Source: Dendrobates tinctorius (lineage: Eukaryota). Taken from it: a DNA stretch of 64,000 nt. Below are positions 4,470 through 56,432 of this stretch, piece after piece. The position numbers and the translations under genes were made by a program. Numbering within the stretch: position 1 is the stretch's first letter; the number at the start of each line of letters is the position of its first letter. Where the stretch lies: assembly GCF_039654945.1 (NCBI RefSeq), contig NW_027361875.1, positions 1-64,000 on the forward strand, written 5' to 3'. The notes below the pieces were generated by a model, which did not search any database, was not told the DNA's origin, and saw only the letters and a program-made list of their open reading frames with translations.

Positions 4470-7400
4470 TCAATGTGACATTTTACTGAATCTGTCCACC
4501 ACCACCATAATTACCGTATTACCTGCTGACACGGGTAGATCAGTCATAAAATCGATGGATAAATGAGTCACAGATCCACTGGGAATCACCAATGGTTGGA
4601 GGGACCTAGACAGACGGACGAGTATGAAACGTTTTAGAACGTGAACAAACACTGCAGGCGCTACATATTCCTGTGCATTGTGATGTACCCCTGACCACCA
4701 AAAACGCAGAGTAAAAAGATCTGTGGTGACTTTATTACCAGGATGTCCGGCCAAGACTGAATCATGATGTTCACTAAAAACTCTTAGCCGGAGATTCACA
4801 GGCACAGTTTACCTAACGGACAGGCCGCAGGGCATCTCCCTGAGCATCAACAACCTCATTTTCAAGATTGGAGAATTAAAGACTCAACCAACCCTTTTTG
4901 TAATATACGCACCGGTTCACAATTATCTCCACCCATAGGATAATTAGATAAGGCATTCGCCTTAATGTTTTTGTTCCCTCGTCTGTATGTAACAAAAAAG
5001 ATAAACCTGGTGAAGAACAATGCCCATCTTGCCTGTCGAGGCGTTAGACGTTTCGCAGACTCTGGATATACAAAATTCCTATCATCCATGATTACCACAA
5101 CTGGTTGAACTTCTCCCTAAAGAAAATGACGGCACGATTACCAAGAGTTTCCTGTTATGAATGTCATAATTCCCGTACATGATTTAAAAAAAAAAATATG
5201 CACATGGACTCCATTTACCAGGAGACGCACCCTGCAACACTACAACACTACAGCTCCCACTTCAGAGGCCTCAACTTCTACAATAAAAGGCTGAGTGACG
5301 TCAGGCTGTATGAGAATCAGCACAGATGCAAAACACTTTCAAATTATCAAATGACCTCTCTGGCCGGACTGGACCACATGGAAAAGTCTGTCCCTTTCCT
5401 AGTCATATCCGTCAGAGGTTTGGCCACTACCAAAAAGTTTTTGATGAACTTGCGGTAGTACATAGATGGTGAAACTCAAAAACCTTTGTAACGCCTTTAA
5501 ATCCTCAGGACGATCCCAATTCATTACCGCCCAGACATTCTCCGGATCCATGCGAAAACCGGAGGACGATAACACATATCCTAGAAAAGGAATCTCCTTA
5601 ACCGAGAACATACATTTCTCTGGTTTGACAAATAATTTATTGTCTCAGAAAATCTTTAAGATCTGCCTGACATGTACCTGATGTGATTCAAGGTCAGGTT
5701 AATAAATTAATATGTCATCAAGATAGATCACCACAAATCTACCTACCAGGTGACTAAAAATGTCATTAACAAAGTGCTGAAAGATGGTGAGAACATTAGT
5801 CAACCCAAATGGCGTCACAAGCTTCTCATAGTGCCTTTAAAGCATATTGAAAGTGGTTTTCCACTCACCCCCCTCTTTAATGCAAATGAGATTATATGCC
5901 CCCCTGAGATCCAGTTTAGAAAACCATTTTACTCCTACAATGTGATTAAAGAGGTCAGGAATGAGAGGAAGCAGATTAGGATCCTGAAACGTGATCTGAT
6001 TGAGTTTGTGGAAATCTAGGCAGGGGCTGTCTTTCTTTGCAAAGAAAAACCCCACAATCCCCCGCAATGGGGGATAGGGACGGTCAGATATTGACCCTTG
6101 ACAAACTTTCCTCAATAATGTCCTTCATGGCCTGCCTCTCTGGACCAGAGATATTATATAGTCTGCTCTTTTGCAGCTTGGCCCCAGAAACAAGATTAAC
6201 GGCACAGTAATGAGGACAATGGGGAAGAAGTTCTTAGCACCCCTGCTCCAAGAACACATCCCCAAAGTCAGACAGGTATTTAGGCAAAGACTGGGTAACC
6301 ACCCTTGCAAGCCAGTTGCCCAAGCAGTGTCCTTGACAATACTCACTCCACTTTACCACATCCCGGGTGTGCAAATCTACCACAGGGTGGCGCAGAGTGA
6401 GCCAAGGAAGTCCAAGAACCACAGGTGAAGACAGACCCTCTAGCACATAATAGTAATACCATCTGAGTGCATGGCCCCTGTAGATGTAACGCTTGGACGG
6501 CTTGATTAAAATACCCCTGTCTCAAGGGTGCGGAGTCGATACGTTTATTTTTTAACCATTCCATTGTAGATTTTGCTTTATGTTTGGGATCATTGTCTTG
6601 TTGGAAGACAAATCTCTGTCCCAGTCTCAGGTCTTTTGCAGACTCCAACAGGTTTTCTTCAAGAATGGTCCTGTATTTGGCTCCATCCATCTTCTCATCA
6701 ATTTTAACCATCTTCCCTGTCCCTGCTGAAGAAAAGCAGGCCCAAACCATGATGCTGCCACCACCATGTTTGACAGTGGGGATGGTGTGTTCAGGGTGAT
6801 GAGCTGTGTTGCCTTTACGCCAAACATATCGCTTGTCATTGTTGCCAAAAATTTCGATTTTGGTTTCATTTGACCAGAGCACCTTCTTCCACATGTTTGA
6901 TGTGTCTCCCAGGTGGCTTGTTGCAAACTATAAACAACACTTTTTATGGATATCTTTGAGAAATTGCTTTCTTCTTGCCACTCTTCCATAAAGGCCAGAT
7001 TTGTACAGGGTACGACTGATTGTGGTCCTATGGACAGACTGTCCCACCTCAGCTGTAGATCTCTGCAGTTCATACAGAGTGCTCATGGGTCTCTTGGCTG
7101 CATCTCTGATCAGTCTTCTCCTTGTTTGAGATGAAAGTTTAGAGGGATGGCCGGGTCTTGGTAGATTTGCAGTGGTATGATGCTCCTTCCATTTCAATAT
7201 GATCGCTTGCACAGTGCTCCTTGGGATATTTAAAGTTTTGGAAATCATTTTGTATCCAAATCCGACTTTAAACTTCTCCACAACAGTATCACGCACCTGC
7301 CTGTTGTGTTCTTTGGTCTTCATGATGCTTGCTGTGCTTCAACCAGAACCCTGAGACTATCACAGAGCAAGTGCATTTATAGACTTGATTACACACAGGT

Positions 7401-8309
7401 GGATTATATTTATCATCCTTAGTCATTTAGGACAACATTGGATCATTCAGAGATCCACAATGAACTTCTGGAGTGAGTTTGCTGCACTGAAAGTAAAGGG
7501 GCCAAATAATATTGCACACCCCACTTTTCAGTTTTTGTATTTCCAGAAAAATATAAAATAACCAATACATTTTGTTCAACTTCACAATTGTGTCCCGCTT
7601 GTTGTTGATTCTTCACCAAAAATTTACATTTGGTATCTTTATGTTTGAAGCATGATATGTGGAAAAAGGCTGAAAAGGGGGCCGAATACTTTCGTAAGGT
7701 ACTGTAGGTCGGGATAGTTTATATGGTTTGAGGCCCTGGACTTGGACGAACCTAGCATTGATCAAGTTAAGCCCTGCCCCACTGCCCAGAAATGCAGAAA
7801 TAACCACCTTATTTTTGCCCAGATGGATTTTAGCCGTCAGAAAAAAATGAGTCCTACCAACTGCGGAGAAATGCACACCTGGGTTGCTAACCTCTCCGTG
7901 ACCCAGACTCCTTCATTTTCTGGTGGCTGTTTACAGTGAGATAAAGAAGGACACGTGCCCACAAAATGGCCCTTTGTACCACAGTAAAAATATACTCCCC
8001 CTTTGAACCGAACAACAGACTGCTTTCCAGAACAAATTCCCCCACCCAACTGCATGGGTTCCTCAGATGACTCAGAGAAGGATCCCCTTGGCCCCGAACC
8101 TGCCGCCCTTTGGAGTGTCTATGTCTCTGGCGAAGACAGCATTCCACCCGGATAGCCAGAGACATGGCCATCTCAAGGGAAACTGCAGTTTCATACAGGG
8201 CTAAGGCATCCAACACCCTTCCTAATAGCCCTTCACAGAACTGGACACGGAGCACGGAGTCATTCCATTTAGTGTCAGTGGACCACCCCGGGTTTTTGGG
8301 GTATTCCAT
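4470..8309 (-). pseudogene. Degenerate Gypsy gag-pol (gag, zinc knuckle, protease, RT, RNase H, integrase), interrupted by a Tc1 fragment
   Basis: Fragments [73 protein letters not shown] and VVVDRFSKMSH occur in Gypsy domain order. Many stops and frameshifts. No LTRs seen. Confidence 0.9.
6540..7704 (-). mobile_element. Tc1 (Passport-like) element, 3'-truncated, nested in the Gypsy protease region
   Basis: Left TIR ends at 7704 followed by TA. ORFs MKTKEHNRQVRDTVVEKF and VKHGGGSIMVWACF...QQDNDPKH. Same family as 54818-56432. Confidence 0.9.
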
Positions 8310-26506: not shown

Positions 26507-28114
26507 CAGTGGGGAAAAAAAAGTATTTAGTCAGTCAGCAATAGTGCAAGTTCCACCACTTAAAAAGATGAGAGGCGTCTGTAATTTACATCATAGGTAG
26601 ACCTCAACTATGGGAGACAAACTGAGAAAAAAAAATCCAGAAAATCACATTGTCTGTTTTTTTTTTCATTTTATTTGCATATTATGGTGGAAAATAAGTA
26701 TTTGGTCAGAAACAAGCAATCAAGATTTCTGGCTCTCACAGACCTGTAACTTCTTCTTTAAGAGTCTCCTCTTTCCTCCACTCATTACCTGTAGTAATGG
26801 CACCTGTTTAAACTTGTTATCAGTATAAAAAGACACCTGTGCACACCCTCAAACAGTCTGACTCCAAACTCCACTATGGTGAAGACCAAAGAGCTGTCAA
26901 AGGACACCAGAAACAAAATTGTAGGCCTGCACCAGGCTGGGAAGACTGAATCTGCAATAGCCAACCAGCTTGGAGTGAAGAAATCAACTGTGGGAGCAAT
27001 AATTAGAAAATGGAAGACATACAAGACCACTGATAATCTCCCTCGATCTGGTGCTCCACGCAAAATCCCACCCCGTTGGGTCAGAATGATCACAAGAACG
27101 GTGAGCAAAAATCCCAGAACCACGCGGGGGGGACCTAGTGAATGAACTGCAGAGAGCTGGGACCAATGTAACAAGGCCTACCATAAGTAACACACTACGC
27201 CACCATGGACTCAGATCCTGCAGTGCCAGACGTGTCCCACTGCTTAAGCCTGTACATGTCCGGGCCCGTCTGAAGTTTGCTAGAGAGCATTTGGATGATC
27301 CAGAGGAGTTTTGGGAGAATGTCCTATGGTCTGATGAAACCAAACTGGAACTGTTTGGTAGAAACACAACTTGTCGTGTTTGGAGGAAAAAGAATACTGA
27401 GTTGCATCCATCAAACACCATACCTACTGTAAAGCATGGTGGTGGAAACATCATGCTTTGGGGCTGTTTCTCTGCAAAGGGGCCAGGACGACTGATCCGG
27501 GTACATGAAAGAATGAATGGGGCCATGTATCGTGAGATTTTGAGTGCAAACCTCCTTCCATCAGCAAGGGCATTGAAGATGAAACGTGGCTGGGTCTTTC
27601 AACATGACAATGATCCAAAGCACACCGCCAGGGCAACGAAGGAGTGGCTTCGTAAGAAGCATTTCAAGGTCCTGGAGTGGCCTAGCCAGTCTCCAGATCT
27701 CAACCCTATAGAAAACCTTTGGAGGGAGTTGAAAGTCTGTGTTGCCAAGCGAAAAGCCAAAAACATCACTGCTCTAGAGGAGATCTGCATGGAGGAATGG
27801 GCCAACATACCAACAACAGTGTGTGGCAACCTTGTGAAGACTTACAGAAAACGTTTGACCTCTGTCATTGCCAACAAAGGATATATCACAAAGTATTGAG
27901 ATGAAATTTTGTTTCTGACCAAATACTTATTTTCCACCATAATATGCAAATAAAATGAAAAAAAAAACAGACAATGTGATTTTCTGGATTTTTTTTTCTC
28001 AGTTTGTCTCCCATAGTTGAGGTCTACCTATGATGTAAATTACAGACGCCTCTCATCTTTTTAAGTGGTGGAACTTGCACTATTGCTGACTGACTAAATA
28101 CTTTTTTCCCCCAC

Positions 28115-28160: not shown

Positions 28161-29077
28161 TCATTTTGCAAATGTTTAGGCACCCCTTATCAAATTACAC
28201 ATTCTGTTTATTTTCGATGTAAGAATAAGAAAACAATTTTATGAAATAATGGATTTTTTGTATACTTCACAGTTGAAAAAATGTTCCACTATAAACTTGA
28301 ATTCAGCAAGTAATAACGAAATCCTAAAGGAACAATATGACGTATTAACCGTACGACATTTTCGGGATAATGTGATTTCTGAAAAACAGTATGTCGATTA
28401 TGTATTGACTGAAAGGATGCAAATAAACAGTAAGGGGAAATCCACATGGGACAGGAAAAATGCACAGCAGATTACAATACCAGGTAAAATCCACAGCAGA
28501 TTACAATACCAGGTAAAATCCACAGCAGATTACAATACTAGGTGTGGTGTAATGACCACTGTATCCGCTAGGGGCGCTGTGTAGATGTCCCAAGAGAGAG
28601 AATGAGTGGCAGAATATGGAAGGACCGTTATGTATCTCAAGGTGGGTGGCCTTGAGATGGAGACTTATGTATGTGTGTAGATCAGCAATGACATTGCTGA
28701 GGTGTTGCTTCAATGTGTCAGGGTGAAGTCTCCAGGTAACTAGAGAGATGGGCAGACCTAGTTACCTACAAACCCACCCAGGGTGTGTGTTTAAAGAACA
28801 CTGTTGTAAAGAGTGTGAGTGGTTGAAGGATCTGTGATGAGGTCAGAGTCATGTAACATAGTAACATAGTAACATAGTTATTAAGGTTGAAGGGAGACTT
28901 TAAGTCCATCTAGTTCAACCCATATCCTATCCTAACTTGCCCTAACATGTTGATCCAGAGGAAGGCAAAAAAAACCCATGTGGCAACAGTAAGCTTCACA
29001 TTGGGGAAAAAAATTCCTTCCCGACTCCACATACGGCAATCAGACTAGCTCCCTGGATCAACGCAATATTAAGGAGA

Positions 29078-31923
29078 CTAGTGTATATACCCTGTAATAT
29101 TATACTTTTCAAGAAAGGCATCCAGTCCCTTCTTAAATTTTAGTAGTGAATCACTCATTACAACATCATATGGCAGAGAGTTCCATAGTCTCACTGCTCT
29201 TACAGTAAAGAATCCGCGTCTGTGAGTATGCTTAAACCTTCTTTCCTCCAGACGTAGAGGATGCCCCCTTGTACCCGTCACAGGTCTAAGAGTAAAAAGA
29301 TCACTAGAAAGGTCTTTGTATTGTCCCCACATATATTTATACATTGTAATAAGATCACCCCTAAGCCTTCGATTCTCCAAACTAAATAACCCCAAGTGTA
29401 ATAACCTGTCTTGGTATTGCAGACCCCCTAGTTCCCTAATAACCTTGGTTGCTCTTCTCTGCACCCGCTCCAGTTCAGCTATGTCTTTCTTATACACCGG
29501 AGACCAGAACTGTACACAGTATTCTAAGTGTGGTCGCACTAGTGACTTATATAGAGGTAAAATTATGTTCTCCTCATGAGCATCTATGCCTCTTTTAATG
29601 CATCCCATTATTTTATTTGCCTTTGCAGCAGCTGCTTGACTCTGGCCACTAAATGTGAGTTTGTCGTCCACCCATACACCCAGGTCTTTTTCAGTGACTG
29701 TTTTGCCCAGTGTTTTACAATTAAGCACATAATTATACAACTTGTTCGTTCTACCCAAGTGCATGACCTTACATTTATCCCCATTAAAGCTCATTTGCCA
29801 TTTATCAGCCCAAGCTTCTAGTTTACATAAATCCTCCTGTAATATAAAATTGTCCTCCTCTGTATTAATTACCCTGCAGAGTTTAGTGTCATCTGCAAAT
29901 ATTGAAATTCTACTCTCTATGCCCCCTACAAGGTCATTAATAAATATGTTAAAAAGAAGCGGGCCCAAAACTGACCCCTGTGGTACCCCACTGCTAACCG
30001 AGACCCAGTCCGAGTGTGCTCCATTAATAACCACCCTTTGTTTCCTATCCCTGAGCCAGCTCTTAACCCACCTACACATATTTTCCCCTATCCCCATTGT
30101 TCTCATTTTATGTATCAACCTTTTGTGTGGCACCGTATCAAAAGCTTTTGAAAAGTCCATGTACACCACGTCCACTGCATTCCCTTGGTCCAGTCCGGAA
30201 CTTACCTCTTCATAAAAGCTTATCAGATTAGTCTGACAGGAACGGTCTCTTGTAAACCCATGTTGATATTGGGTCATAAGGTTATTCTTCTCCAGATACT
30301 CCAGTATAGTATCTCTTAGAAAACCCTCCAGGATTTTACCCACAGTTGAGGTTAAACTTACTGGCCTATAATTTCCAAGTTCAGTTTTTGTCCCCTTTTT
30401 GAATATTGGCACCACATTTGCTATACGCCAGTCCTGTGGTACAGACCCTGTTATTATGGAATCTTTAAAGATTAAAAATAGTGGTCTATCTATGACTGTG
30501 CTTAATTCCTGCAGTACTCGGGGGTGTATCCCATCCGGGCCCGGGGATTTGTCAATTTTAGTGATTTGTAGATGCCGCCGTACTTCCTGCTGGGTTAAGC
30601 AGGTGACATTTAATGGAGAATTTTTATCCCTGATCATGTTATCCGTCATGGGATTTTCTTGTGTCAATACTGTTGAAAAAAAGTCATTTAGCATATTGGC
30701 TTTTTCCTCATCCTCATCCACCATTTCACCCAGACTATTTTTAAGGGGGCCAACACTATCATTTTTTAGCTTCTTACTATTTATGTAGTTAAAGAATATT
30801 TTGGGATTATTTTTACTTTCTCTGGCAATGAGTCTCGCTGTCTCAATCTTTGCTGTCTTGATTTGCTTTTTACAGAATTTATTTAATCTTCTGTATTTAT
30901 TTAATGCCTCATCACTACCTACTTGCTTTAATTCGCTAAATGCTTTATTTTTGTCCCTTATTGCACCCCTTACAACTCTATTTAGCCATAGTGGTTTCCT
31001 CCTATTTCTAGCATATTTATTCCCATACGGTATATACTGTGCACAGGTCCTATTCAGGATGCTAATAAACGTCTCTCATTTTCTTTGTGTATTTTTATGT
31101 CTCAGGATATCATCCCAGTTAATTGCACCAAGATCATCTCTCATCCGTTGGAAATTTACCTTCCTGAAGTTTAGTGTCCTTGTAACCCCTCTACTACACA
31201 TCTTATTAAAGGATACATGAAAACTTATTAATTTGTCATCACTATTACCCAAGTGACCCTCAACCCTTACATTTGATATGCGGTCTGGCCTGTTGGTTAA
31301 CATTAGGTCTAGCAGTGCCCCCCCTCTTGTTGGGTCCTGAACCAGTTGTGAAAGGTAATTGTCTCTCATCGTTGTCAGAAACCTATTACCTTTGCTGGAA
31401 CTGCAGGTTTCGGTTCCCCAATGTATTTCAGGGTAGTTGAAGTCCCCCATAATAATGACTTCTCCTTGAGTCGCTGCTTCATCTATTTGCTTTATGAGGA
31501 TATTCTCTGTAGCTTCCATTATTTTTGGAGATTTATAACAAACCCCTATCAGTAATTTATTATTTCCCCCCCTCCCCTTATCTCTACCCACAGGGACTCT
31601 ACATTTTCATTAGATTCATATATATTATCACGAAGGATGGGTTTTAAGGATGATTTTACATATAAACACACGCCTCCCCCTCGCTTATTTGTACGGTCAT
31701 TTCTGAACAGACTATAGCCCTGTAAATTAACCGCCCAGTCATGGGTCTCGTCCAGCCATGTCTCAGATATCCTCACCATGTCATAATTATGTTCCAACAA
31801 CATTAACTCCAATTCCTCCATTTTGTTGGCGAGACTTCTGGCATTAGTATACATGCACTTTATGTATCTCTCTGTACCTCTATTCTTTCTTAAATTATTA
31901 ACTGTTCTAACCCCACCCCCCAT
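29078..31923 (-). pseudogene. CR1 ORF2 (APE endonuclease plus reverse transcriptase), one frameshift and one nonsense codon
   Basis: CMYTNARSL, SETWL, MGDFNYP, NYRPVSLTS, DFSKAFD, GVPQGSVLGP and FADD motifs. Frameshift near 31570. Stop at 31076-31078, then open to 29078. Confidence 0.92.
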
Positions 31924-32400: not shown

Positions 32401-33444
32401 TGTGACCCAGTGGGCGTGGCTATGGACCATATAATGTGGCCAGGGTAGGTCACATGTGGTGAATGCTGGGACCTGGTTGGTCCAGTGTGGAAGGTCCCGC
32501 TGAGAAGGGGATTCCTGCCTGACAGCACGTGTGGATGCTGTGTTTAATGGCTGCAAATACCTAAGAGTTCCCTGGAGGGAATGAATGTCTGCAGTATGGA
32601 GAAGCAGCCATGAGAGAACCCTGAATGGGTGAGATATAACTGTGAGGCTGAAAACCCTGCGTATTGGACATTGCTAACAGAGTGAAGCTCTGTCATGGAT
32701 GCTATGCCGTTTATATATTGCTGGTCATGGTTTATGATGTTTAATAAACCGCATGGACTATACTGGTTTGTGGAAAACCTGTGCCGGATCTGTTTTTTTG
32801 GCTGCCAAGCAAGTGATCCCCTACTTAAATGACAGCGCTACCTCACAATGGTGAAATCCACAGCAGATTACAATACCAGGTAAAATCTACAGCAGATTAC
32901 AGGACAAGGAGAAATCCACAGCAAATTACAATAGAAGGTAAAATCCACAGCAAATTACAGGACAAAAAGAAATCCACAGCAAATTACAATAGAAGGAAAA
33001 ATCCACAGTAGATTACAGCTCCAGGTAAAATCCACCGCAGATTACAATACCAAGTAAAATCCACAGCAAATTACAATACCAGGTGAAATCCACAGCAAAT
33101 TAGAGAAGCGGCTAAAATCCACAGCAGATTACAGTACCAGGTGAAATCCACAGCAAATTAGAGAAGCGGATAAAATCCACAGCAGATTACAGTACCAGGT
33201 GAAATCCACAGCAAATTGCAGTGGCAGGTAAAATCCACAGCAGATTACAATACCAGGTAAAATCCACAGCAAATTACAATACCAGGTGACATCCACAGCA
33301 AATTAGAGTAGCGGCTAAAATCCACAGCAGATTACAGTACTAGGTGAAATCCACAGCAAATTGCAGTAGCAGGTAAAATCCACAGCAGATTACAGTACCA
33401 GGTAAAATCCACAGCAGATTACAATACCAGGTGAAATCCACACC

Positions 33445-35460
33445 ATGAGAAAACAAATCCAGAAAATCATCTTGCCTGATTTGGCAAGATTTATTTTGCA
33501 AATTATGGTGGAAAATAAGTATTTGGTCACCTAAAAACATGCAAGATTTCTGGCTCTCACAGAACTGTAACTTCTTTAAGAGGCTCCTCTGTCCTCCACT
33601 CATTACCTGTAGTAATGGCACCTGTTTGAACTTGTTATCAGTATAAAAGACACCGTCCACAACCTCAAACAGTCACACTCCCAAACTCCACTATGGTGAA
33701 GACCAAAGAACTGTCAAAGGACACCAGAAACAAAATTGTAGCCCTGCACCAGGCTGGGAAGACTGAATCTGCAATAGGCAAGCAGCTTGGTGTGATGAAA
33801 TCAACTGTGGGAGCAATAATAAGAGAATGGAAGACATACAAGACTACTGATAATCTCCCTCGATCTGGGGCACCATGCAAGTTTTCAACCCGTGGGGTCA
33901 AAATGATCACAAAAATGTTGAGCAAAAATCCCAGAACCACACGGGGGGATCTAGTGAATGACCCGCATAGAGCTGAAACCCCCGTAACAAAGGCTACCAT
34001 CAGTAACACACTACGCCGCCAGGGACTCAGATTCTGCAGTGCTAGATGTGTCCCCCTGCTTAAGCGAGTATATGTCCAGGCCCATCTGAAGTCTGCTAGA
34101 GAGTATTTGGATTATCCAGAAGAGTATTGGGAGAATGTCATGGTATGATGAAACCAAAGTAGTAACAAAACTCGTTGTGTTTGGAGGAGACAGAATGCTG
34201 AGTTGCATCCAAAGAACGAACACCATACCTATTGTGAATCATGGGGGTGGCAACATCATGCTTTGGGGCGGTTTCTCTGCAAAGGGACCAGGACGACTAA
34301 TCCGTGTACATGAAAGAATGAATGGGGCGATGTATCGTGAGATTTTGAGTACAAACCTCCTTCCATCAGCTAGGGCATTGAAGATGAAATGTGGATGGGT
34401 CTTTCAGCATGAGAATGATCCCAAGCACACCGCCAGGGCAATGAAGGAGTGGCTTCGTAAGAAGCATATTAAAGGGAATCTGTCACCCCTTTTTTGAGAT
34501 ATCATATAATGATATAATTCAATTGTGTGTTACCTAAGTATTGTAGTCGTATTTTTCCCCCCGCACCTTTGATGCATAAATACCTTTGTTATCACTCTTC
34601 AGATTTATGGAAATTGCCGCGGTCCGATGGGCGTGGCTTATTCTCCCCCCACCTTGACTTGCTTGACGTAATTTCTTCTGTGAATCTAACAGATGGCATT
34701 GTTTATTCGCGCCTGCGCATTCATAAGGCCCCTCGCGCTTGCGCAGTATGCTTTGCCCAAATGTGGGCAAAGCATATAATCGCTACTGCGCATGCGCCGG
34801 TATTTTTCCCTGCATCTATGACCCAGAAGTTTTCATATGCATACGAAGACCTCCGGGTCATAGACGCCAGGAAAAATACCGGCGCATACGCATTAGCGAT
34901 TATATGCTTTGCCCACAGTTGGGCAAAGCATACTGCGCAAGTGCGAGCGGTCTTTTCAATGCGCAGCCGCTGACATACTACGTACGTGAACGCAAGACTT
35001 ACTATAATGAAATACGCAGAGCAAGACAAGGTGGGGGGGAAGAATAAGCCATGCCCATCAGATTGGACCACGGCGATTTCCATAAATCTGAAGAGTGATA
35101 ACAAAGGTATTTATGCATCAAAGGTGTGGGGACAAGGGGGGAAAAATATGACTACAATACTTGGGTAACACAACTGAATGATATCATTATATGATATCTC
35201 AAAAAAGGGGTGACAGATTCCCTTTAAGGTCCTGGATTGGCTTGGCCAGTCTCCAGATCTCAACCCCATAGAAAACCTTTGGAGGGAGCTGAAAGTCCGT
35301 GTTGCCCAGCGACAGGCCCAAAACAGCAATGCTCTAGAGGAGATCTGCATGGAGGAATGGGCCAACATACCAACAGTGTGTGCCATCCTTGTGAAGACTT
35401 ACAGAAAATGTTTTACCTCTGTCATTGCCAAAAAAAAAATATATAATGAAATATTGAGAT
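33445..35460 (+). mobile_element. Older decayed Tc1 copy (same family as 26507-28116) with MITE insertion
   Basis: [16 protein letters not shown], with frameshifts and truncated TIRs. Confidence 0.9.
34473..35223. mobile_element. T2/Kolobok-like MITE, near-perfect 750-bp palindrome
   Basis: TTAA-AGGGAATCTGTCAC...GTGACAGATTCCCT-TTAA. The transposase reading resumes after it. Confidence 0.9.
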
Positions 35461-45040: not shown

Positions 45041-47680
45041 AGGGTACTATATGAAAAGGGTATAATATAAGGTAGTACGTCTTAATTATGTAGCAGGGGT
45101 TGGGGTAGAATCATAGAATCATAGAGGGGTAGCCCCCTCATAGAATATAATGCAGCCCCCTCTCATAGAATATAATGCAGCACCCCACAAAATATAATGC
45201 AACCCCATAATAAGGTATAATGCATTCCCCACCATAGAATATAGCACCCTCATAGTGTATAATGCAGTCCCCCTCATATAGTATAATGCAGCCCCACTAC
45301 CGAATATAATGCAGCCCTCCATAGAGTATACTGTAGCCCCCTCATAGGGCATAATGCTGCCCACTGAAAAAGTAATTTAGTCACCTGAGAATAATGCAGC
45401 CCCACCACAGAATATAATGTTGCCTCCTCATAAAGTATAATGCAGCCTCTCCCCACCACATCATCGTCCTCATCACCACCTCCATTGCCTTCTCCCCCAC
45501 CACCCCTATCATTCTCCCCACCACCCCCATCACTGCTCATTCCACCACCTCAATCATTGCCTCCTCCCCCACCACCATCATTGTCCATTTCATCACCTCC
45601 ATCATTGCCTCCCCCACCATCATTGCCCATCACCTCCATCATTGCCTCCCCCACCAGCATTGCTGCCCCCCACCATCATTGCCCATCACCTCCATCATTG
45701 CCTCCCCCACCATTATTGCCCATCACCTCCATCATTGCCTCCACCCACCATCATTGTCCATCACTTCCATCATTGCTTCCCCCACCACCATCATTGTCCA
45801 TCACCTCCATCATTGCCTCTCCCCACCAATATCATTGTCCTTCCACACCACCCCTCTCTCACACACACAGAAAGCACCGCATCACTCTCTCACACTCAAA
45901 GCACCGCACCACATACACACGCAGACACACAGACACATAGCACAGCTCACCTCCCCGCAGCACATCCCGGCAGCCTCTTCCTCGCCGGCAGCTTTCTGTC
46001 TGAGACAGCGCGCTGGATGATGACATCATCCAGCTGGGCTGTCTCAGACAGGAAGCGCTGGGCAGGAAGCCGGGATGTGCTGTGCCGTGTGTGTGTATGT
46101 GGTGCGGTGCTTTGTGTGTGTGTGTTGTGTGGTGATGGGGCTTTACAAGCGGGTATTGTTAGCTGCAGCCTGCTGCTATCGCTGCCCGCTATTAAAGAGA
46201 AATGGTATTCACGCCTCTCCACACCCATAGGGGCGTGGGGAAGCGTGAATATTCTTTTCGCTTTAGCAGCGGGGACAGGATCCTGTCTCCAGCTGCTGCT
46301 ACGCTGGCACAGGGCAGGCCCCCTTGACTCAGGGGCCCCATAGCCACTGGCTGGGGGCCCCTGGAGCAGTGGGGGCCCTTGGAGCCGGGGGGGCCCTAGG
46401 CAGCTGCTAGCCAGTATGCCAGCAGGTGTAAGTGTCTGGGCCCACCGGAGGGTCCTCCGGTTCCTCGGTGGGCCAATCCAAGCCTGGTTTCTGCTGTCGA
46501 ATAGCCGTGAGACATGTAGCTGCAGGGACTCGAACATATTATTCAAGCACACTGAAGACACTCGGTTAGCACACGAGCATGCTTAGATAACACCATATCC
46601 CAGCACGTTCGCTCATCACTAAGAAGAACCTTATCATAAGGTGATGTGTATCCACTGAAATACTTAGGTAATGTACCAATTTAAACTTTAAAAATTAGGG
46701 CAAGTATATATCTTCTCATTTGATCATCTAACCAGTGTGTGGCCACCTTGTGGGATGAGTGATGTGGAGGTGAACCATTTATCCACTAGGTCATTTCCTC
46801 TTACTGTTTTGAGGACAATCGATTTAAATATTTGTCAAGTTCAGGTCTCTTTTACACCGGTTGATGAGCAATGATGGGGACAGAACAATTGCTAATAAAA
46901 CTGTCCTTCCATATACAGTATCATGGATACATGGTACCAGAGTCAGAATGGCCCATGGGGAAATATGTGAATCCCCTCATGGAACCCTGTGCAGGAGTAA
47001 GACACTTAACCCCTAAATGGCCCAATACATTTACTTGACTCTGCATAGATATCGTCATTCATTCAATAAACCAACCAGTTTATTAATTAAATGCAGAGGT
47101 AGAATTGTGAATTGGAGCAATGTAATATTTGCATGTAACTGAACTCTGGGCCCCCAGAGTAAATATTACTGGTGGGCTCCTTCAAGGCCAGTCCGACACT
47201 ACACAGAGCAATTTGCTGCTGATACCAGGGTAGTACGAGCGTCATTTGTATTCCTCGTCCGTAGAAAAATGTTAAAAATAAGTTTCACCTCCTTCTCCAT
47301 TCTGACAGTCCATAAAAATCAGTCTGCACTAAGATGCCTTCCGAACGCCGTCCGATTTTTTTCACCGACTCATTGACTTGCACTGTCGATTTTAATTCAA
47401 CCCTCGGATCAAAATCAGCTATATCTCCAATATTTCCCGCGGACTTCTCGGGCAGAGAAAAAAAAGGACATGTGCACAGCCCTATACACTATCTATCATA
47501 GGTACAAGTACTATTTGTGAAAACCGCACATAGCACTTGTACGTGATTACCAGACATATGAATGAGCCCTAACAAGGATTTTTGGGGGGGCTGACAATTC
47601 AAACACCTGAGGAACAAAATGGCATGTATACATAGGAGGATAAATCGGGAATGAGTGTTCTTATTTTTGACGATTATCTA

Positions 47681-49579
<1,899 letters not shown>

Positions 49580-50238
49580 TATTTGTCTGAATGCATCATA
49601 ACTTATCGGTCAACTGGGTATTAAGTTAGAGTCTGATTTGGGCTCTATTTGGAGTGTCAGCTACTATTATGAGAAAGTGACTTCAATGATGTAAGTCCAT
49701 AACTACAGCTGCGCCCCACATCATTGCTGTGCCCTATTTCTTTGGTAATTACAGAACTGGTATTTAGTTATAGCTAGCCAAAGATAACCTCATATAGAAT
49801 GTACACACAGAGTTTATTACTTATATCCATGTTAAAGAACGACATTGCTAAGTATAGCTTAGATGAAATAAGCTGTAACACACCAGGTGTGGTGAGCAGT
49901 GAAATGACCTGGAACTTATATGTGGATGCATCATCAGGACTCTTGTGTTCAATCCTTGTGGGAATCGTGCGTTATCACAGCGTCGTCCAAATTTAGAAAT
50001 ATTTCTAGAACCGCTAAAGGGCTTTGCAAGTGTTCCCAGTATGTCAGGGCCTTCAGCCACATGGCATATTGGGGTCACTGCTGGTTTCCACCACTTCTAT
50101 CCTTAATTGGGTGCAGAGGAGTGAACCATGTCTGTTAGAGCGATTTCCTTATATTATTTACATGGATTCAGTTTAGCAAAAAATAGGGCATTACAGGAAT
50201 AGGCAAGTGAATATGAGTGTTTAGTGCATCCTGTGGTA

Positions 50239-51852
50239 CAGTCATATGTAAAAGTTTGGGCACCCCTATTAATGTTAACCTTTTTTCTTTATAACAATTT
50301 TGGTTTTTGCAACAGCTATTTCAGTTTCATATATCTAATAACTGATGGACTCAGTTATATTTCTGGATTCAAATGAGGTTTATTGTACTAACAGAAAATG
50401 TGCAATCTGCATTTAAACAAAATTTGACCGGTGCAAAAGTATGGGCACCCTTATCATTTTCTTGATTTGAACACTCCTAACTACTTTTTACTGACTTCCT
50501 GAAGCACTAAGTTGGTTTTGTAACCTCATTGAGCTTTGAACATCATAGCCAGGTGTATCAAATCATGAGAAAAGGTATTTAAGGTGGCCACTTGCAAGTA
50601 GTTCTCCTATTTGATTCTCCTATGAAGAGTGGCATCATGGGCTCCTCAAAACAACTCTCAAATGATCTGAAAACAAAGATTATTCAACATAGCTTTTCAG
50701 GGGAAGGATACAAAAAGTTGTCTCAGAGATTTAACCTGTCAGTTTCCACTGTGAGGAACATAGTAAGGAAATGGAAGAACACAGGTACAGTTCTTGTTAA
50801 GCCCAGAAGTGGCAGACCAAGAAAAATATCAGAAAGGCAGAGAAGAAGAATGGTGAGAACAGTCAAGGACAATCCACAGACCACCTCCAAAGACCTGCAG
50901 CATCATCTTGCTGCAGATGGTGTCACTGTGCATCGGTCAACAATACAGCGCACTTTGCACAAGGAGAAGCTGTATGGGAGAGTGATGCGAAAGAAGCCGT
51001 TTCTGCAAGCACGCCACAAACAGTCGCCTGAGGTATGCAAAAGCACATTTGGACAAGCCAGTTACATTTTGGAAGAAGGTCCTGTGGACTGATGAAACAA
51101 AGATTGAGTTGTTTGGTCATACAAAAAGGAGTTATGCATGCGCTGTATTGTTGACTGATGCACAGTGACACCATCTGCAGCAAGATGATGCTGCAGGTCT
51201 TCGGAGGTGGTCTGTGGATTGTCCTTGACTATTCTCACCATTCTTCTTCTCTGCCTTTCTGATATTTTTCTTGGCCTGCCACTTCTGGGCTTAACAAGAA
51301 CTGTACCTGTGTTCTTCCATTTCCTTACTATGTTCCTCACAGTGGAAACTGACAGGTTAAATCTCTGAGACAACTTTTTGTATCCTTCCCCTGAAAAGCT
51401 ATGTTGAATAATCTTTGTTTTCAGATCATTTGAGAGTTGTTTTGAGGAGCCCATGATGCCACTCTTCATAGGAGAATCAAATAGGAGAACTACTTGCAAG
51501 TGGCCACTTTAAAAACCTTTTCTCATGATTTGATACACCTGGCTATGAAGTTCAAAGCTCAATGAGGTTACAAAACCAATTTAGTTCTTCAGGAAGTCAG
51601 TAAAAAGTAGTTAGGAGTGTTCAAATCAAGAAAATGATAAGGGTGCCCATACTTTTGCACCGGTCAAATTTTGTTTAAATGCAGATTGCACATTTTCTGT
51701 TAGCACAATAAACCTCATTTGAATCCAGAAATATAACTGAGTTCATCAGTTATTAGATATATGAAACTGAAATAGCTGTTGCAAAAACCAAAATTGTTAT
51801 AAAGAAAAAAGGTTAACATTAATAGGGGTGCCCAAACTTTTACATATGACTG
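50239..51852. mobile_element. Palindromic Tc1 derivative made of two inverted 5' halves
   Basis: TA flanks. Arms 50239-50952 and 51139-51852 are 714 bp each. ORFs 50592..51092(+) and 51062..51499(-) share their N-terminal sequence almost exactly. Confidence 0.95.
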
Positions 51853-51933
51853 TATAAGAATAAATAATATTGCATTTTATAATAAAATTTCACAGTAATG
51901 ACTATAATAAGTGCATCACTTAACATACACATA

Positions 51934-53501
51934 CACTGTGTTCCAAATTATTATGCAAATTGGATTTAAGTGTCATAAAGATGTAATTTTTTGTTTTTCA
52001 AATAAACTCATAGATGGCATTGTGTATCAGGGCTCTTTGGATCACTGAAATCAATCTCAAACGCCTGTGATAATTAGTTTACAAGATGAGCTCAATTAAA
52101 GGAAAACTACTTAAGAATGATGTTCCACATTATTAAGCAGGGCACAGGTTTCAAGGAATTTAGGAAATAAAACGGATCTCTCTGCTGCTGAAAAGCATCA
52201 AATAGTGCAATGCCTTGGTCAAGAGATGAAAATACTAGATATTTCCCAAAAACTTAAACGTGATCATCGTACTGTTAAGAGATTTGTGGTTGATTCTGAG
52301 CACAGACATGTTTGTGCTGATAAAGGCAGAATGAGGAAGGTTTCTGCCAGGCAAGTTCATCGGATTAAGAGAGTGACTGCTAAAAAGCCATTACAAACCA
52401 GCAAACAGATATTTAAAGCTGCTGGTGCCTCTGGATTCCCTCAAACCTCAAGGTGTAGGATCCTTCAAAGGCTTGCTGTGGTGCATAAACCTACTATTCG
52501 GCCACTCCTAAACAGTGCTCACAAGCAGAAATGGTTGCAGTGGGCCCAGACATACATGAAGACTAATTTTCAAACAGTCTTGTTTACTGATGAGTGTCGA
52601 GCAACCCTGGATGGTCCAGATGGATGGAGTAGTGGATGGTTGGTGGATGGCCACTATGTCCCAACAAGGCTGCGACGTCAGCAAGGAGGTGGAGTCATGT
52701 TTTGGGCCGGAATCATGGGGAAACAGCTGGTAGGGCTCTTTAAGGTTCCTGAAGGTGTGAAAATGACCTCTGCAAAGTATATAGAGTTTCTGACTGACAG
52801 CTGTCTTCCATGGTATAAAAAGCAGAAATGTGCCTTCAGGAGCAAAATCATCTTCATGCATGACAGTGCACCATCTCATGCTGCAAAGAATACCTCTGAG
52901 TCATTGACTGCTATAGGCATAAAAGGAGATAAACTCATGGTGTGGCCACCATCTTCCCCTGACCTCAACCCTATAGAGAACCTTTGGAGTATCATCAAAC
53001 AAAAGATCTATGAGGGTGGGAGGCAGTTCACATCAAAACAGCCGTTCTGGGAGGCAAATTCTGACTTCATGCAAAGAAATACAAGCAGAAACTCTCCAAA
53101 AACTCACAAGTTCAATGGATGCAAGAATTGTGAAAGTGATATCAAAGAAGGGTTCCTATGTTAACATATAACTTGGCCTGTTAGGATGTTTTGGAGTTAA
53201 ATAGCTTTTTTGTTTGGTGAATGTGACCTCCTAATGCTGCAAATTCCACAAATGAGCATTTTCAGTTCTTTAAAACAAATCAAATGTTTAGAAATTCTAC
53301 TGTGCATAATAATTTGGAACAGTGCAATTTGAGTTTTTATTCATTTTGGAGATTATACTGTTATCATTGGGAGGTTTCTTCAATAAAATTTGATGTATAC
53401 TCTAACGGGTGATGACTTTTATTAGACTGACTGTCATTTGTACTGACTATTTAGGAAAATCATAGAAAAATATAATTTGCATAATAATTTGGAACACAGT
53501 G
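51934..53501 (+). mobile_element. Tc1/mariner DD37E (TRT-like) element
   Basis: 27-bp TIR CACTGTGTTCCAAATTATTATGCAAAT with TA flanks. Confidence 0.92.
52160..53164 (+). pseudogene. DD37E transposase with lost start codon and C-terminal frameshift
   Basis: FTDE, MHDSAPSH and [10 protein letters not shown] motifs, with 37 residues between D and E. No ATG at the expected start. Confidence 0.85.
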
Positions 53502-54817: not shown

Positions 54818-56432
54818 CAGTGCCTTGCGAAAGTATTCGGCCCCCTGGAACTTTTCAACCTTTTCCCACATATCATGCTTCAAACATAAAGATACTAAAT
54901 GTAAATTTTTGGTGAAGAATTAACAACAAGTGGAGCACAATTGTGAAGTTTAACGAAATTTATTGGTTATTTTAACTTTTTGTGGAAATTCAAAAACTGA
55001 AAAGTGGGGCGTGCAATATTATTCGTCCCCTTTCAGTGCAGCAAACTCACTCCAGAAGTTCATTGTGGATCTCTGAATGATCCATTGTTGTCCTAAATGA
55101 CTAATGATGATAAATATAATCCACCTGTGTGTAATCAAGTCTCCGTATAAATGCACCTGCTCTGTGATAGTCTCAGGGTTCTGTTTGAAGCATAGAGAGC
55201 ATCATGAAGACCAAGGAACACAACAGGCAGGTCCGTGATACTGTTGTGGAGAAGTTTAAAGCTAAATTTGGCTACAAAATGACTTCCAAAACTTTAAACA
55301 TCCCAAGGAGCACTGTGCAAGCAATCATATTGAAATGGAGTATCATACCACTGCAAATCTACCAAGACCTGGCCATCCCTCTAAACTTTCATCTCAAACA
55401 AAGAGAAGACTGATCAGAGACGCAGCCAAGAGGCCCATGATCACTCTGGATGAACTACAGAGATCTACAGCTGAGGTGGGACAGTCTGTCCATAGGACAA
55501 CAGTCGTACACTGCACAAATCTGGCCTTCATGGAAGAGTGGCAAGAAGAAAGCCATTTCTCAAAGATAGCCATAAAAAGTGTTGTTTAAAGTTTGCAACA
55601 AGCCACCTGGGAGACACACCAAACATGTGGAAGTAGGTGCTCTGGTCAGAAGAAACCAAAATCGAACTTTTTGACAACAATGCCAAACGATATGTTTGGC
55701 GTAAAGGCAACACAGCTCATCACCCTGAACACACAAACCCCACTGTCAAACATGGTGGTGGCAGCATCATGGTTTGGAGCTGCTTTTCTTCAGCAGGGAC
55801 AGGGAAGATGGTTAAAATTGATGGGAAGATGGATGGAGCCAAATACAGGACCATTCTTGAAGAAAACCTGTTGGAGTCTGCAAAAGGCCTGAGACTGGGA
55901 TAGAGATTTGTTTTCCAACAAGGCAATGATCCCAAACATAAAGCAAAATCTACAATGGAATAGTTCACAAATAAACATATCCAGGTGTTAGAATGGCCAA
56001 GTCAAAGTCCAGACCTGAATCCAATCGAGAATCTGTGGAATGAGCTGAAAACAGCTGTTCACAAACGATCTCCATCAAACCTCACTGAGCTCGAGCTGTT
56101 TGCCAAGGAAGAATGGGCAAGAATTTCAGTCTCTCGATGTTCAAAACTGATAGAGACATACCCCAAGCGACTTGTAGCTGTAATCGTCGCAAAAGGTGGT
56201 GGAACAAAGTATTAAGTTCAAGGTGCCGAATAATATTGCACGCCCCACTTTTCAGTTTTTGAATTTCCACAAAAAGTTAAAATAACCAATAAATTTTGTT
56301 CAACTTCACAATTGTGTCCCACTTGTTGTTGATTCTTCACCAAAAATTTACATTTTGTATCTTTGTTTGAAGCATGATATGTGGGAAAAAATTGAAAAGT
56401 TTCAGGGGGCCGAATACTTTCGCAAGGCACTT
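54818..56432 (+). mobile_element. Complete Tc1 (Passport-like) element, transposase disrupted
   Basis: TA-CAGTGCCTTGCGAAAGTATTCGG, about 210-bp TIRs. MKTKEHNRQVRD through [15 protein letters not shown], with stops and frameshifts. Confidence 0.93.

What the first reader, a model, noticed from the sequence alone, without database searches (positions are those of the whole stretch)
50239..51852. Head-to-head Tc1 made of two left halves: a 714-bp hairpin encoding only the DNA-binding domain twice
Seen: the TA-flanked 1614-bp element has arms 50239-50952 and 51139-51852 that differ at roughly a dozen positions by eye. Each arm holds the left TIR, the promoter region and the N-terminal ~105 codons (paired-like HTH, GRPRK, second HTH). 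The 186-bp spacer continues the transposase just past the first catalytic D, then switches strand at a TG microhomology. The catalytic domain and right end are absent. Inference: it arose by template switching or abortive gap repair and may still be mobilisable in trans. Any transcript would fold into long dsRNA against the parent family (a Mu-killer-like siRNA source), and truncated proteins could act as dominant-negative TIR binders. This makes it a candidate self-silencing or repressor element.
Basis: partly seen in the sequence, partly recalled or inferred. Interest (0 to 1): 0.75.

Follow-up and report, generated by a model that had tools for sequence, protein, structure and literature searches.

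The report
Fold-back Tc1 transposon, two left halves
A dead "jumping gene" in a frog genome is built from two mirror-image copies of its own front half; it is real and was inserted as a unit, but this is a known way for such elements to rearrange, and its proposed self-silencing role is untested.

Summary
A TA-flanked 1614-bp element (50239-51852) has two inverted 714-bp arms with 11 mismatches (1.5%) around a 186-bp spacer. Each arm carries a full IR/DR left end and the first 105 codons of a Sleeping-Beauty-like DNA-binding domain. The spacer runs just past the first catalytic D, then flips strand at a TG shared with the parent sequence.

Contigs of a run labelled as another organism show the exact empty site with a single TA, so the element, or a full-length precursor, was inserted here.

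Canonical family copies have terminal repeats of only about 211 bp, so the 714-bp arms are derived.

The structure matches a published mechanism: template switching between terminal repeats during gap repair, then microhomology joining ("Goblin", PMC3814204).

First-stage notes of this scan list at least 10 more 1600-1616-bp "fold-back Tc1" elements elsewhere in this genome, two of them naming a 714-bp hairpin. I could not check them, but they point to a trans-mobilised non-autonomous family.

The silencer and repressor readings remain untested. There is no locus-specific RNA, no small-RNA data and no sign of selection on the ORFs.

Verdict: real, a new member of a known kind, moderately interesting.

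The parts
50237..50238 (.). Left TA target-site duplication
   Evidence: Sequence. The empty-site contig in run X5 keeps a single TA (joint 50235->51852, 3 letters fit either side).
50239..50952 (+). Left arm: parental positions 1-714 (left IR/DR, 5' UTR, codons 1-105 of the transposase)
   Evidence: Inverted repeat I1; arm alignment with 11 mismatches.
50247..50269 (+). Outer direct repeat (putative transposase-binding site) of the left IR
   Evidence: Families D1/I2; motif scan gives 4 exact sites in the element.
50432..50454 (+). Inner direct repeat of the left IR; left/right homology of canonical family copies ends at about 50449
   Evidence: Contigs of canonical right ends diverge at 50449 and, mirrored, at 51642 (loose ends).
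50637..51095 (+). Left truncated ORF: 152 aa from the ATG plus stop. Residues 1-128 are the complete PAI-GRPRK-RED DNA-binding domain; the rest is a 24-aa out-of-frame tail.
   Evidence: Pfam HTH_SB 1.2e-16 and HTH_Tnp_Tc3_2 7.3e-18; PDB 2m8e and 5unk.
50953..51138 (+). Spacer (hairpin loop): parental positions 715-900, present once
   Evidence: translation in the shifted frame.
51021..51022 (+). Site of a 2-bp (AG) deletion that shifts the transposase frame; many family contigs carry the two extra bases
   Evidence: read-laying table 4: 'put in behind 51021: AG' in 12 contigs of X1, 7 of X5, 4 of X15 and 1 of X6.
51091..51093 (+). Codon of the first catalytic aspartate (WTDETK motif)
   Evidence: The identification of the motif rests on knowledge of the Tc1/SB DDE domain.
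51139..51140 (.). TG microhomology at the strand-switch junction
   Evidence: The canonical copies read ...GCATG then G-AGG... (loose ends at 51140 and 51127). The reverse complement of the left arm reads TG-CGCTG....
51139..51852 (-). Right arm: inverted copy of parental positions 1-714
   Evidence: Beyond the canonical repeat limit (51642) it carries left-type interior, not the canonical right-end interior.
51062..51454 (-). Right truncated ORF: 130 aa from the ATG plus stop. It has 105 canonical residues (PAI, GRPRK, most of RED), then 25 residues read through the junction into the antisense of the spacer.
   Evidence: No protein in the 5.8-billion collection covers the junction tail.
51637..51659 (-). 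Inner direct repeat of the right arm
   Evidence: D2, I2.
51822..51844 (-). Outer direct repeat of the right arm
   Evidence: D2, I3.
51853..51854 (.). Right TA target-site duplication

Best explanation
This is one copy of a non-autonomous fold-back derivative of an IR/DR-type (Sleeping-Beauty-like) Tc1 family of a frog. How it formed (inferred): a full-length copy was excised and the gap was being refilled from a template copy. The strand growing in from the right side copied the terminal repeat, switched to the nearly identical left terminal repeat, and went on into the left interior up to position 714. The strand growing from the left reached position 902. The two released 3' ends, which had the same sense, paired only at TG/CA and were joined. 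The product keeps two complete IR/DR ends and the full-length size of 1.6 kb, so a family transposase supplied in trans could move it. How it came here: it was inserted at a TA that is still empty in a related organism or haplotype (insertion shown; insertion as an already folded unit inferred). Since then it has decayed neutrally. Each arm still has an open reading frame for the DNA-binding domain. Any read-through or convergent transcript would fold into about 700 bp of double-stranded RNA. No activity as a silencer or repressor is shown.
For: The structure is as described. IR/DR ends are intact and identical at the binding sites. TA duplication is present. An X5 contig (record 17, depth 8.5) joins 50235 to 51852, skipping 1616 = 1614 + TA with no footprint, and has 3 substitutions in 536 nt of flank. 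X1 contigs cover both flank/end junctions without a difference (records 1 and 3). Canonical copies diverge from this element exactly at 51140 and at the inner repeat at 50449/51642, so the parent has terminal repeats of about 211 bp and a normal catalytic continuation. The arms differ more (11 in 714) than the flanks of the filled and empty alleles (3 in 536; one-sided p = 0.085). This hints that the fold-back predates this insertion. The mechanism is published for Goblin/Ozma (PMC3814204). IR/DR elements poorly mobilise miniature substrates and seem to need spacing between their ends (PMC5224488), which fits a derivative of full-length size. Transposons with two identical preferred ends are efficient substrates (PMC4505599). 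Unchecked notes describe at least 10 elements of 1600-1616 bp with the same description on other pieces of this genome.
Against: I could not see any second copy of the junction myself. The read-laying output lists no contig across 51139. All runs were contigs, so there is no depth and no long-read span. The family is absent from the protein and contig collections I could search. A 2-nt microhomology is weak evidence on its own. The arm-versus-flank comparison is not significant. X1 may be the sample the assembly was made from, so it is not independent support. The empty-site contig could come from a paralogous locus.
Confidence: 0.72

Rival explanations
1. Single in-situ event. A normal full-length Tc1 inserted at this TA and was later converted on the spot, by excision plus aberrant gap repair or by replication template switching between its terminal repeats. 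The fold-back never transposed.
For: The formation mechanism acts at the donor site by definition (PMC3814204). The empty site only shows that something was inserted here. I verified no second copy.
Against: Notes describe at least 10 same-size elements on other pieces, two with 714-bp arms (unchecked). Arm divergence tends to exceed flank divergence, which is the wrong direction for a conversion that came after the insertion.
Confidence: 0.12
2. Functional reading of the first reader. The fold-back family is an effective trigger of silencing (hairpin RNA processed into small RNAs against the parent family, as with Mu killer), and/or its DNA-binding-domain ORFs make proteins that block the ends of active copies (KP-like).
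For: The anatomy equals that of Mu killer: two copies of one terminal repeat plus an inverted partial transposase 5' region (PMC3440606). The predicted fold is -1348 kcal/mol with 707 of 714 positions paired. Both ORFs are open, and the left one has the complete PAI-RED domain. Tc1-like elements of Xenopus are transcribed on both strands and yield piRNAs (PMC3144230). Notes place other copies in introns or UTRs of host genes (unchecked).
Against: There is no locus-specific transcript. The run guessed to be RNA has no depth on the unique left flank (49700-50154), and its depth over the element and the neighbouring repeat cannot be told from other copies. There are no small-RNA data. Coding differences between the arms are 1 synonymous to 3 non-synonymous, and divergence is similar in coding and non-coding parts. 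Open ORFs are expected by chance at 0.8% decay per arm. Vertebrate germlines rely mainly on piRNAs, and long dsRNA is often edited or sensed, not diced (general knowledge).
Confidence: 0.12
3. Assembly or sequencing artefact (fold-back chimera).
For: Palindromes are a known artefact of some long-read libraries. No independent long read was available to me.
Against: The arms differ at 11 sites. Two different unique flanks carry a TA duplication that matches a precise empty site in another run. The junction lies at a coding position with microhomology, not at a read or contig end. The same structure is reported from many other windows.
Confidence: 0.03

Closest known systems
Goblin, a derivative of the Tc1/mariner element Ozma in Aedes aegypti (Yang et al. 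2013, PMC3814204)
   Same: Both subterminal regions derive from one end of the parent, with different lengths and inverted relative to each other. They are joined at microhomologous sites that are inverted on the parent. The proposed origin is a template switch between terminal repeats during gap repair, followed by end joining.
   Different: Goblin is a miniature element built from the right end. This one is full-length in size (1614 bp), built from the left end of an IR/DR-type vertebrate Tc1, and keeps the 5' UTR and the DNA-binding-domain ORF twice.
Mu killer of maize (PMC3440606)
   Same: [quoted passage not shown] The transcript is a long hairpin.
   Different: Mu killer is a single locus of the Mutator superfamily in a plant with RNA-directed DNA methylation, and its silencing effect is shown genetically. 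Here the superfamily, the host and (apparently) the copy number differ, and no silencing is shown.
MADE1 / hsa-mir-548 (Hsmar1-derived palindromic MITE; discussed in PMC5224488)
   Same: It is a Tc1/mariner-superfamily derivative that is essentially a palindrome. It was amplified in trans, and its transcripts are processed into small RNAs.
   Different: MADE1 is 80 bp long and consists of the two terminal repeats only. It comes from a simple-IR mariner. It has no coding sequence.
KP element of Drosophila P (truncated transposase repressor; from memory, not read here)
   Same: It is an internally rearranged non-autonomous copy that still encodes the DNA-binding N-terminus of the transposase.
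   Different: KP is a simple internal deletion, and its repressor activity and spread in populations are demonstrated. Here expression and activity are unknown.
Sleeping Beauty / Tdr1 IR/DR Tc1-like elements
   Same: It has TA target duplication and terminal repeats of about 210 bp, each with two direct repeats. The DNA-binding domain is PAI-GRPRK-RED, and the first-D motif is [12 protein letters not shown].
   Different: The catalytic domain after the first D and the right-end interior are missing. The right end is a second left half.

Membership tests
Tc1/mariner superfamily, IR/DR (Sleeping-Beauty-like) Tc1 group | TA target-site duplication flanking CAGT... termini | tested here: met
   precise empty site with one TA.
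Tc1/mariner superfamily, IR/DR (Sleeping-Beauty-like) Tc1 group | Long terminal inverted repeats, each with two direct-repeat binding sites | tested here: met
   23-nt repeats at 50247 and 50432 and mirrored at 51637 and 51822, 185 nt apart. The canonical repeat limit at about 211 nt is inferred from contig loose ends.
Tc1/mariner superfamily, IR/DR (Sleeping-Beauty-like) Tc1 group | Transposase with bipartite paired-like DNA-binding domain (PAI, GRPR hook, RED) | tested here: met
   Pfam HTH_SB and HTH_Tnp_Tc3_2 above their cut-offs; PDB 2m8e, 6urs and 5unk.
Tc1/mariner superfamily, IR/DR (Sleeping-Beauty-like) Tc1 group | Complete DDE catalytic domain (needed for an autonomous member) | tested here: not met
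   The coding sequence stops 15 codons after the first D. The continuation seen in family contigs is absent from the window. The element is therefore a non-autonomous derivative, not an autonomous member.
Fold-back / long-TIR derivatives made by template switching in gap repair (Goblin type) | Both subterminal regions derived from the same parental end, inverted, of unequal length | tested here: met
   Parental 1-902 on the left and 1-714 inverted on the right. The right arm carries left-type interior beyond the canonical repeat limit.
Fold-back / long-TIR derivatives made by template switching in gap repair (Goblin type) | Microhomology at the junction, inverted on the parent | tested here: met
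   TG at 51139-51140 is shared by the parental continuation and the inverted arm. It is only 2 nt, so it is weak on its own.
Fold-back / long-TIR derivatives made by template switching in gap repair (Goblin type) | Related elements with shorter terminal repeats and a normal interior coexist in the genome | tested here: met
   Thousands of family contigs were laid in three runs. Their loose ends show the canonical continuation at 51140 and the canonical right-end interior at 50449/51642. No full-length copy was read end to end.
Fold-back / long-TIR derivatives made by template switching in gap repair (Goblin type) | Several copies with the same junction at different loci, each with its own target duplication (a transposed family) | tested here: inconclusive
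   Only unchecked first-stage notes exist. My own searches for the junction outside the window found nothing, in collections that also lack the family.
MITE | Miniature size (tens to a few hundred bp) without coding sequence | tested here: not met
   The element is 1614 bp with two ORFs of 130-152 aa.
Mu-killer-like hairpin silencer | Inverted duplication of the transposase 5' part together with its terminal repeat | tested here: met
   comparison with PMC3440606.
Mu-killer-like hairpin silencer | Transcription through the palindrome | tested here: inconclusive
   Run X6 (RNA by guess only) has family contigs over 50306-51133 and none on the unique left flank. They cannot be assigned to this locus.
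Mu-killer-like hairpin silencer | Small RNAs from the arms and heritable silencing of the parent family in trans | not testable with these tools
   There was no small-RNA run or genetic test within reach.
KP-like truncated-transposase repressor | ORF keeping the DNA-binding domain and lacking the catalytic domain | tested here: met
KP-like truncated-transposase repressor | Purifying selection on, or expression of, the truncated ORF | tested here: inconclusive
   The arms differ by 1 synonymous and 3 non-synonymous changes. This shows no sign of constraint, but four sites give no power.

The most novel reading that the evidence does not exclude
The fold-back is a mobile, multi-copy 'suicide' derivative. 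It is the one kind of non-autonomous element that the IR/DR quality control lets through, because it keeps two full ends at native spacing. It therefore spreads with the family into transcribed regions. There, each copy feeds about 700 bp of double-stranded RNA covering the promoter and 5' coding part of the parent into small-RNA pathways, and supplies end-binding protein fragments. In this way a vertebrate Tc1 family would shut itself down. That would be a Mu-killer-like trigger that is itself transposable, in an animal.
Probability: 0.1. Interest if true: 0.75.

Novelty: new member of a known kind. Interest (0 to 1): 0.4.

Why it matters
There are two points of modest interest.

First, work on Sleeping Beauty and Tdr1 concluded that IR/DR-type Tc1 elements do not give rise to amplified internally deleted derivatives, perhaps because the ends need a minimal spacing (PMC5224488). 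A fold-back derivative that replaces the right half with a second left half keeps both complete IR/DR ends and the native length. If the other copies noted in this genome share the junction, it shows how such a family can still spawn a successful parasite of itself.

Second, the structure is the animal counterpart of maize Mu killer. If the copy-number notes hold, it is present in many copies, some reportedly inside host transcripts. That makes the question 'does a DNA transposon family generate its own silencing trigger in a vertebrate?' directly testable with small-RNA data from this frog.

For this single locus nothing beyond an ordinary, neutrally decaying insertion is shown.

Tried and rejected
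1. Looking for other copies of the junction.
- The protein word search with the junction-spanning right-arm ORF found only relatives of about 80% identity or less, and none covered the tail.
- The exact look-up of the 86-aa ORF that crosses the junction found nothing.
- The exact junction 23-mer in metagenome contigs gave 0.
- The positive control with the outer repeat motif was also 0 in metagenome, genome and viral contigs.
- These blanks therefore say nothing about copy number.

2. Getting a full-length family copy to compare left and right terminal repeats. None is in the window: blastn and tblastn found only other Tc1 families at about 40% amino-acid identity. The closest contig fetched (L001) belongs to a family about 80% identical. 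I tried to read left- versus right-specific variants from the 'other letters' table of read laying. I dropped this because contigs are placed on the best-fitting arm, so an unflagged site is ambiguous.

3. Model 'an excised or broken linear element folds back and then integrates'. Rejected as less likely because pre-cleaved linear Sleeping Beauty substrates are not accepted by the transposase (PMC5224488).

4. Model 'two independent insertions, or a nested insertion, plus deletions'. Rejected because the empty site shows one TA and uninterrupted flanks. This model would need two exact deletions.

5. Rfam scan for known miRNA or other RNA families in 49500-52500: only chance-level hits.

6. The promoter/terminator scan is for bacterial signals and is irrelevant here.

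7. Locus-specific expression could not be judged. All runs were served as contigs, and the run guessed to be RNA does not cover the unique left flank.

Full report
**What is there**

The window holds a 1614-bp element at 50239-51852, flanked on both sides by TA and starting CAGTC.... The repeat finder reports one inverted repeat with arms 50237-50952 and 51139-51854 (716 nt including the TA, 98% complementary) separated by 186 nt. It is by far the longest inverted repeat in the 64-kb window.

The arms differ at 11 of 714 positions (1.54%), without any indel. Eight differences are transitions and three are transversions; two are of CpG type.

**What the parts are**

- Each arm begins with an IR/DR-type end: two 23-nt direct repeats, 87% alike and 185 nt apart (50247 and 50432, mirrored at 51637 and 51822).
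- From the ATG at 50637 the left arm encodes a DNA-binding domain. It matches Pfam HTH_SB (residues 1-52) and HTH_Tnp_Tc3_2 (69-129), both above their curated cut-offs, with GRPRK between them. It also matches the solved PAI and RED subdomains of Sleeping Beauty (2m8e, 6urs, 5unk).
- The arm ends at codon 105.
- The spacer continues the same gene. A 2-bp deletion behind 51021 shifts the frame; many family contigs have AG there (table 4). In the shifted frame the text reads [38 protein letters not shown]. This is the stretch around the first catalytic aspartate of Tc1 transposases; the motif identification rests on established knowledge of the family.
- Fifteen codons after that D the sequence turns into the reverse complement of position 714.
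- The left ORF (152 aa) therefore holds the whole DNA-binding domain plus an out-of-frame tail.
- The right ORF (130 aa) holds 105 canonical residues plus 25 residues read through the junction.

**Comparison with normal copies of the family**

No other member of the family is in the window. The several other Tc1-like elements present are only about 40% identical at the protein level.

Contigs of four public runs laid on 49700-52400 show that the family is very abundant, with thousands of contigs laid. Their loose ends show what a canonical copy looks like.
- Contigs that follow the spacer leave it exactly after 51140 and go on with G-AGG-CTA-AAA..., the normal continuation of the transposase.
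- Other contigs follow the outer end only as far as 50449 (mirrored at 51642), the inner direct repeat. They then continue with a different interior, which I take to be the canonical right end.

So the parent has terminal repeats of about 211 bp and a normal gene. The 714-bp arms of this element are derived. Neither the canonical continuation nor the canonical right-end interior occurs anywhere in the window. Because the parent reads ...GCATG-G... and the inverted arm begins TG-CGCTG..., the dinucleotide TG at 51139-51140 belongs to both partners. The 2-nt microhomology is real, though weak on its own.

**Is it real, and how did it get here**

- In run X1 (same organism label, possibly the assembly's own sample), one contig covers 49700-50261 and another covers 51831-51952, both without a difference. 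Both flank/end junctions therefore exist in reads (records 1 and 3).
- In run X5, labelled as a different organism, a 941-nt contig at single-copy depth (8.5) runs along the left flank with 3 substitutions and 3 small insertions in 536 nt. It then jumps from 50235 to 51852 with three letters fitting either side.
- That is the exact empty site: one TA, no footprint, then 82 nt of right flank (table 5).
- The element, or a full-length precursor, was therefore inserted at this TA in the lineage of the assembled genome.
- An assembly artefact is very unlikely. The arms differ, the flanks are different unique sequences, the target duplication matches an empty allele, and the junction sits inside coding sequence.
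- Still missing: a read across 51139 from an independent sample, and a long read spanning both arms. The read-laying output lists no contig bridging the junction, and all runs were served as contigs.

**How it formed**

The anatomy has three features: both sides come from the same parental end, their lengths are unequal (902 and 714), and they are joined at a microhomology that is inverted on the parent. This is exactly what Yang et al. described for Goblin, a derivative of the Tc1/mariner element Ozma (PMC3814204).

Their model runs as follows. After excision, the gap is refilled by synthesis-dependent strand annealing. One nascent strand, having copied a terminal repeat, switches to the other terminal repeat and continues into the wrong subterminal region. 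The released ends are then joined by microhomology. The same paper notes that long-TIR and hairpin-like elements whose autonomous relatives have short TIRs may arise this way.

Here the two nascent strands would have the same sense, so they could pair only through TG/CA, as observed.

I considered two other routes.
- An excised or broken linear element folds back and then integrates. This is disfavoured because pre-cleaved linear Sleeping Beauty DNA is not accepted as a substrate (PMC5224488).
- Two insertions plus deletions. This does not fit the single-TA empty site.

**Was the fold-back itself mobile**

Direct evidence from my own calls is limited to a hint. The arms differ more (11 in 714) than the filled and empty alleles differ in the flank (3 in 536). 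This suggests the arms began to diverge before the insertion here. The difference is not significant (one-sided binomial p = 0.085, or 0.17 without the CpG-type sites).

Published experiments make mobility plausible.
- Transposons with two identical preferred ends are the most efficient substrates for Mos1 and Mboumar-9, and the authors state that a similar result was seen for Sleeping Beauty (PMC4505599).
- IR/DR elements handle miniature substrates poorly and seem to need spacing between their ends (PMC5224488). This derivative preserves that spacing, because it has the size of a full-length element.

The strongest lead is not mine. The scan's first-stage notes list at least ten further elements of 1600-1616 bp on other pieces of the same genome, described as fold-back Tc1 made of two 5' halves. 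Two of them name a 714-bp hairpin. There is also a 1335-bp derivative.
- About 783 windows (roughly 50 Mb) have been read, so this would extrapolate to hundreds of copies.
- These notes are unchecked, and I could not read those windows.
- They moved my estimate that this is an amplified family from about 40% to about 80%.

**Function**

Nothing is shown.
- The RNA of the element is predicted to fold into one long stem (-1348 kcal/mol; 707 of 714 arm positions paired with their mirror positions). That follows from the inverted repeat.
- The only run guessed to be RNA (X6) has family contigs over 50306-51133 but no depth on the unique left flank. Nothing can be assigned to this locus, and the run may be DNA.
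- Between the arms, the coding part has 4 differences (1 synonymous, 3 non-synonymous) in 316 nt, and the non-coding part has 7 in 398 nt. This is the pattern of neutral decay.
- At under 1% decay per arm, open ORFs of 130-152 codons are expected by chance.
- Rfam has no family here.
- The Mu-killer analogy is structurally apt. [quoted passage not shown]
- Tc1-like elements of Xenopus are transcribed on both strands and yield piRNAs (PMC3144230).
- Whether this fold-back family contributes to that remains a hypothesis. I put it at roughly one in ten.

**Context**

The element lies in a transposon-rich stretch, between two other Tc1-like elements.
- One lies at 47679-49581, with 148-nt inverted ends and a DDE_3 ORF.
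- The other starts near 51935. It has a 319-aa DDE_3 ORF at 52205-53164 and is itself very abundant in the runs.

I found no evidence that the site lies in a host gene.

**Verdict**

The origin and mobility parts of the interpretation are supported by anatomy, an empty site and published precedent. The silencing and repressor parts are untested. This is a new member of a known kind: a fold-back non-autonomous derivative made by template switching. It has two noteworthy features, full-length size in an IR/DR family and a doubled promoter-plus-DNA-binding module.

Noticed in passing
window 51935-53300 (ORF 52205-53164 +): Another Tc1/mariner-type element starts about 80 bp to the right of the fold-back. 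It has a 319-aa ORF with a DDE_3 domain (E 5.6e-13). Summed contig depth over it is about 5,000-10,000 times the single-copy flank depth in X1, so it is also a very abundant family.
   Followed up: partly
window 47679-49581: A Tc1-like element has 148-nt inverted ends (92% complementary) and a 242-aa ORF with a weak DDE_3 match, just left of the finding. The fold-back therefore sits between two other DNA transposons.
   Followed up: partly
window 26512-28112 and 33489-35375: These are two copies (86-92% alike) of yet another Tc1-like family. The first has 204-nt terminal repeats that are 99% complementary. Arrays of a 29-nt tandem repeat lie beside both (28423-28573 and 32763-33545, 18 or more units).
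   Followed up: no
window 6538-7677 and 54851-55981: Two inverted copies (91-98% alike) of a further Tc1-like family lie 47-48 kb apart. The N-terminal domain is about 40% identical to that of the fold-back.
   Followed up: no
window 29078-30724 (-): A 548-aa open reading frame has a reverse-transcriptase domain (RVT_1, E 1e-35), so a retroelement lies in the same window.
   Followed up: no
window 51021-51022: The frameshifting 2-bp deletion of this copy appears to be shared by much of the family. The two extra bases are present in only about 40% of summed contig depth in X1 and X5. This suggests that a frameshifted, already dead subfamily makes up much of the family.
   Followed up: no
window 50264/51826 (read laying joints, runs X1 and X15): In two runs, contigs join the outermost 26 nt or so of each end through the same 33 unrelated letters. 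This would be a tiny derivative of roughly 85 bp. It would be noteworthy because IR/DR elements are said not to form miniature derivatives (PMC5224488). The evidence is at contig level only.
   Followed up: no
window 50690->51372 (X15) and 50262->51390 (X5): Contigs join left-arm positions directly to left-type interior of the right arm at other breakpoints. They could be deleted copies of the fold-back or independent head-to-head junctions. The matching sides are short (26-29 nt), so they may be artefacts.
   Followed up: no
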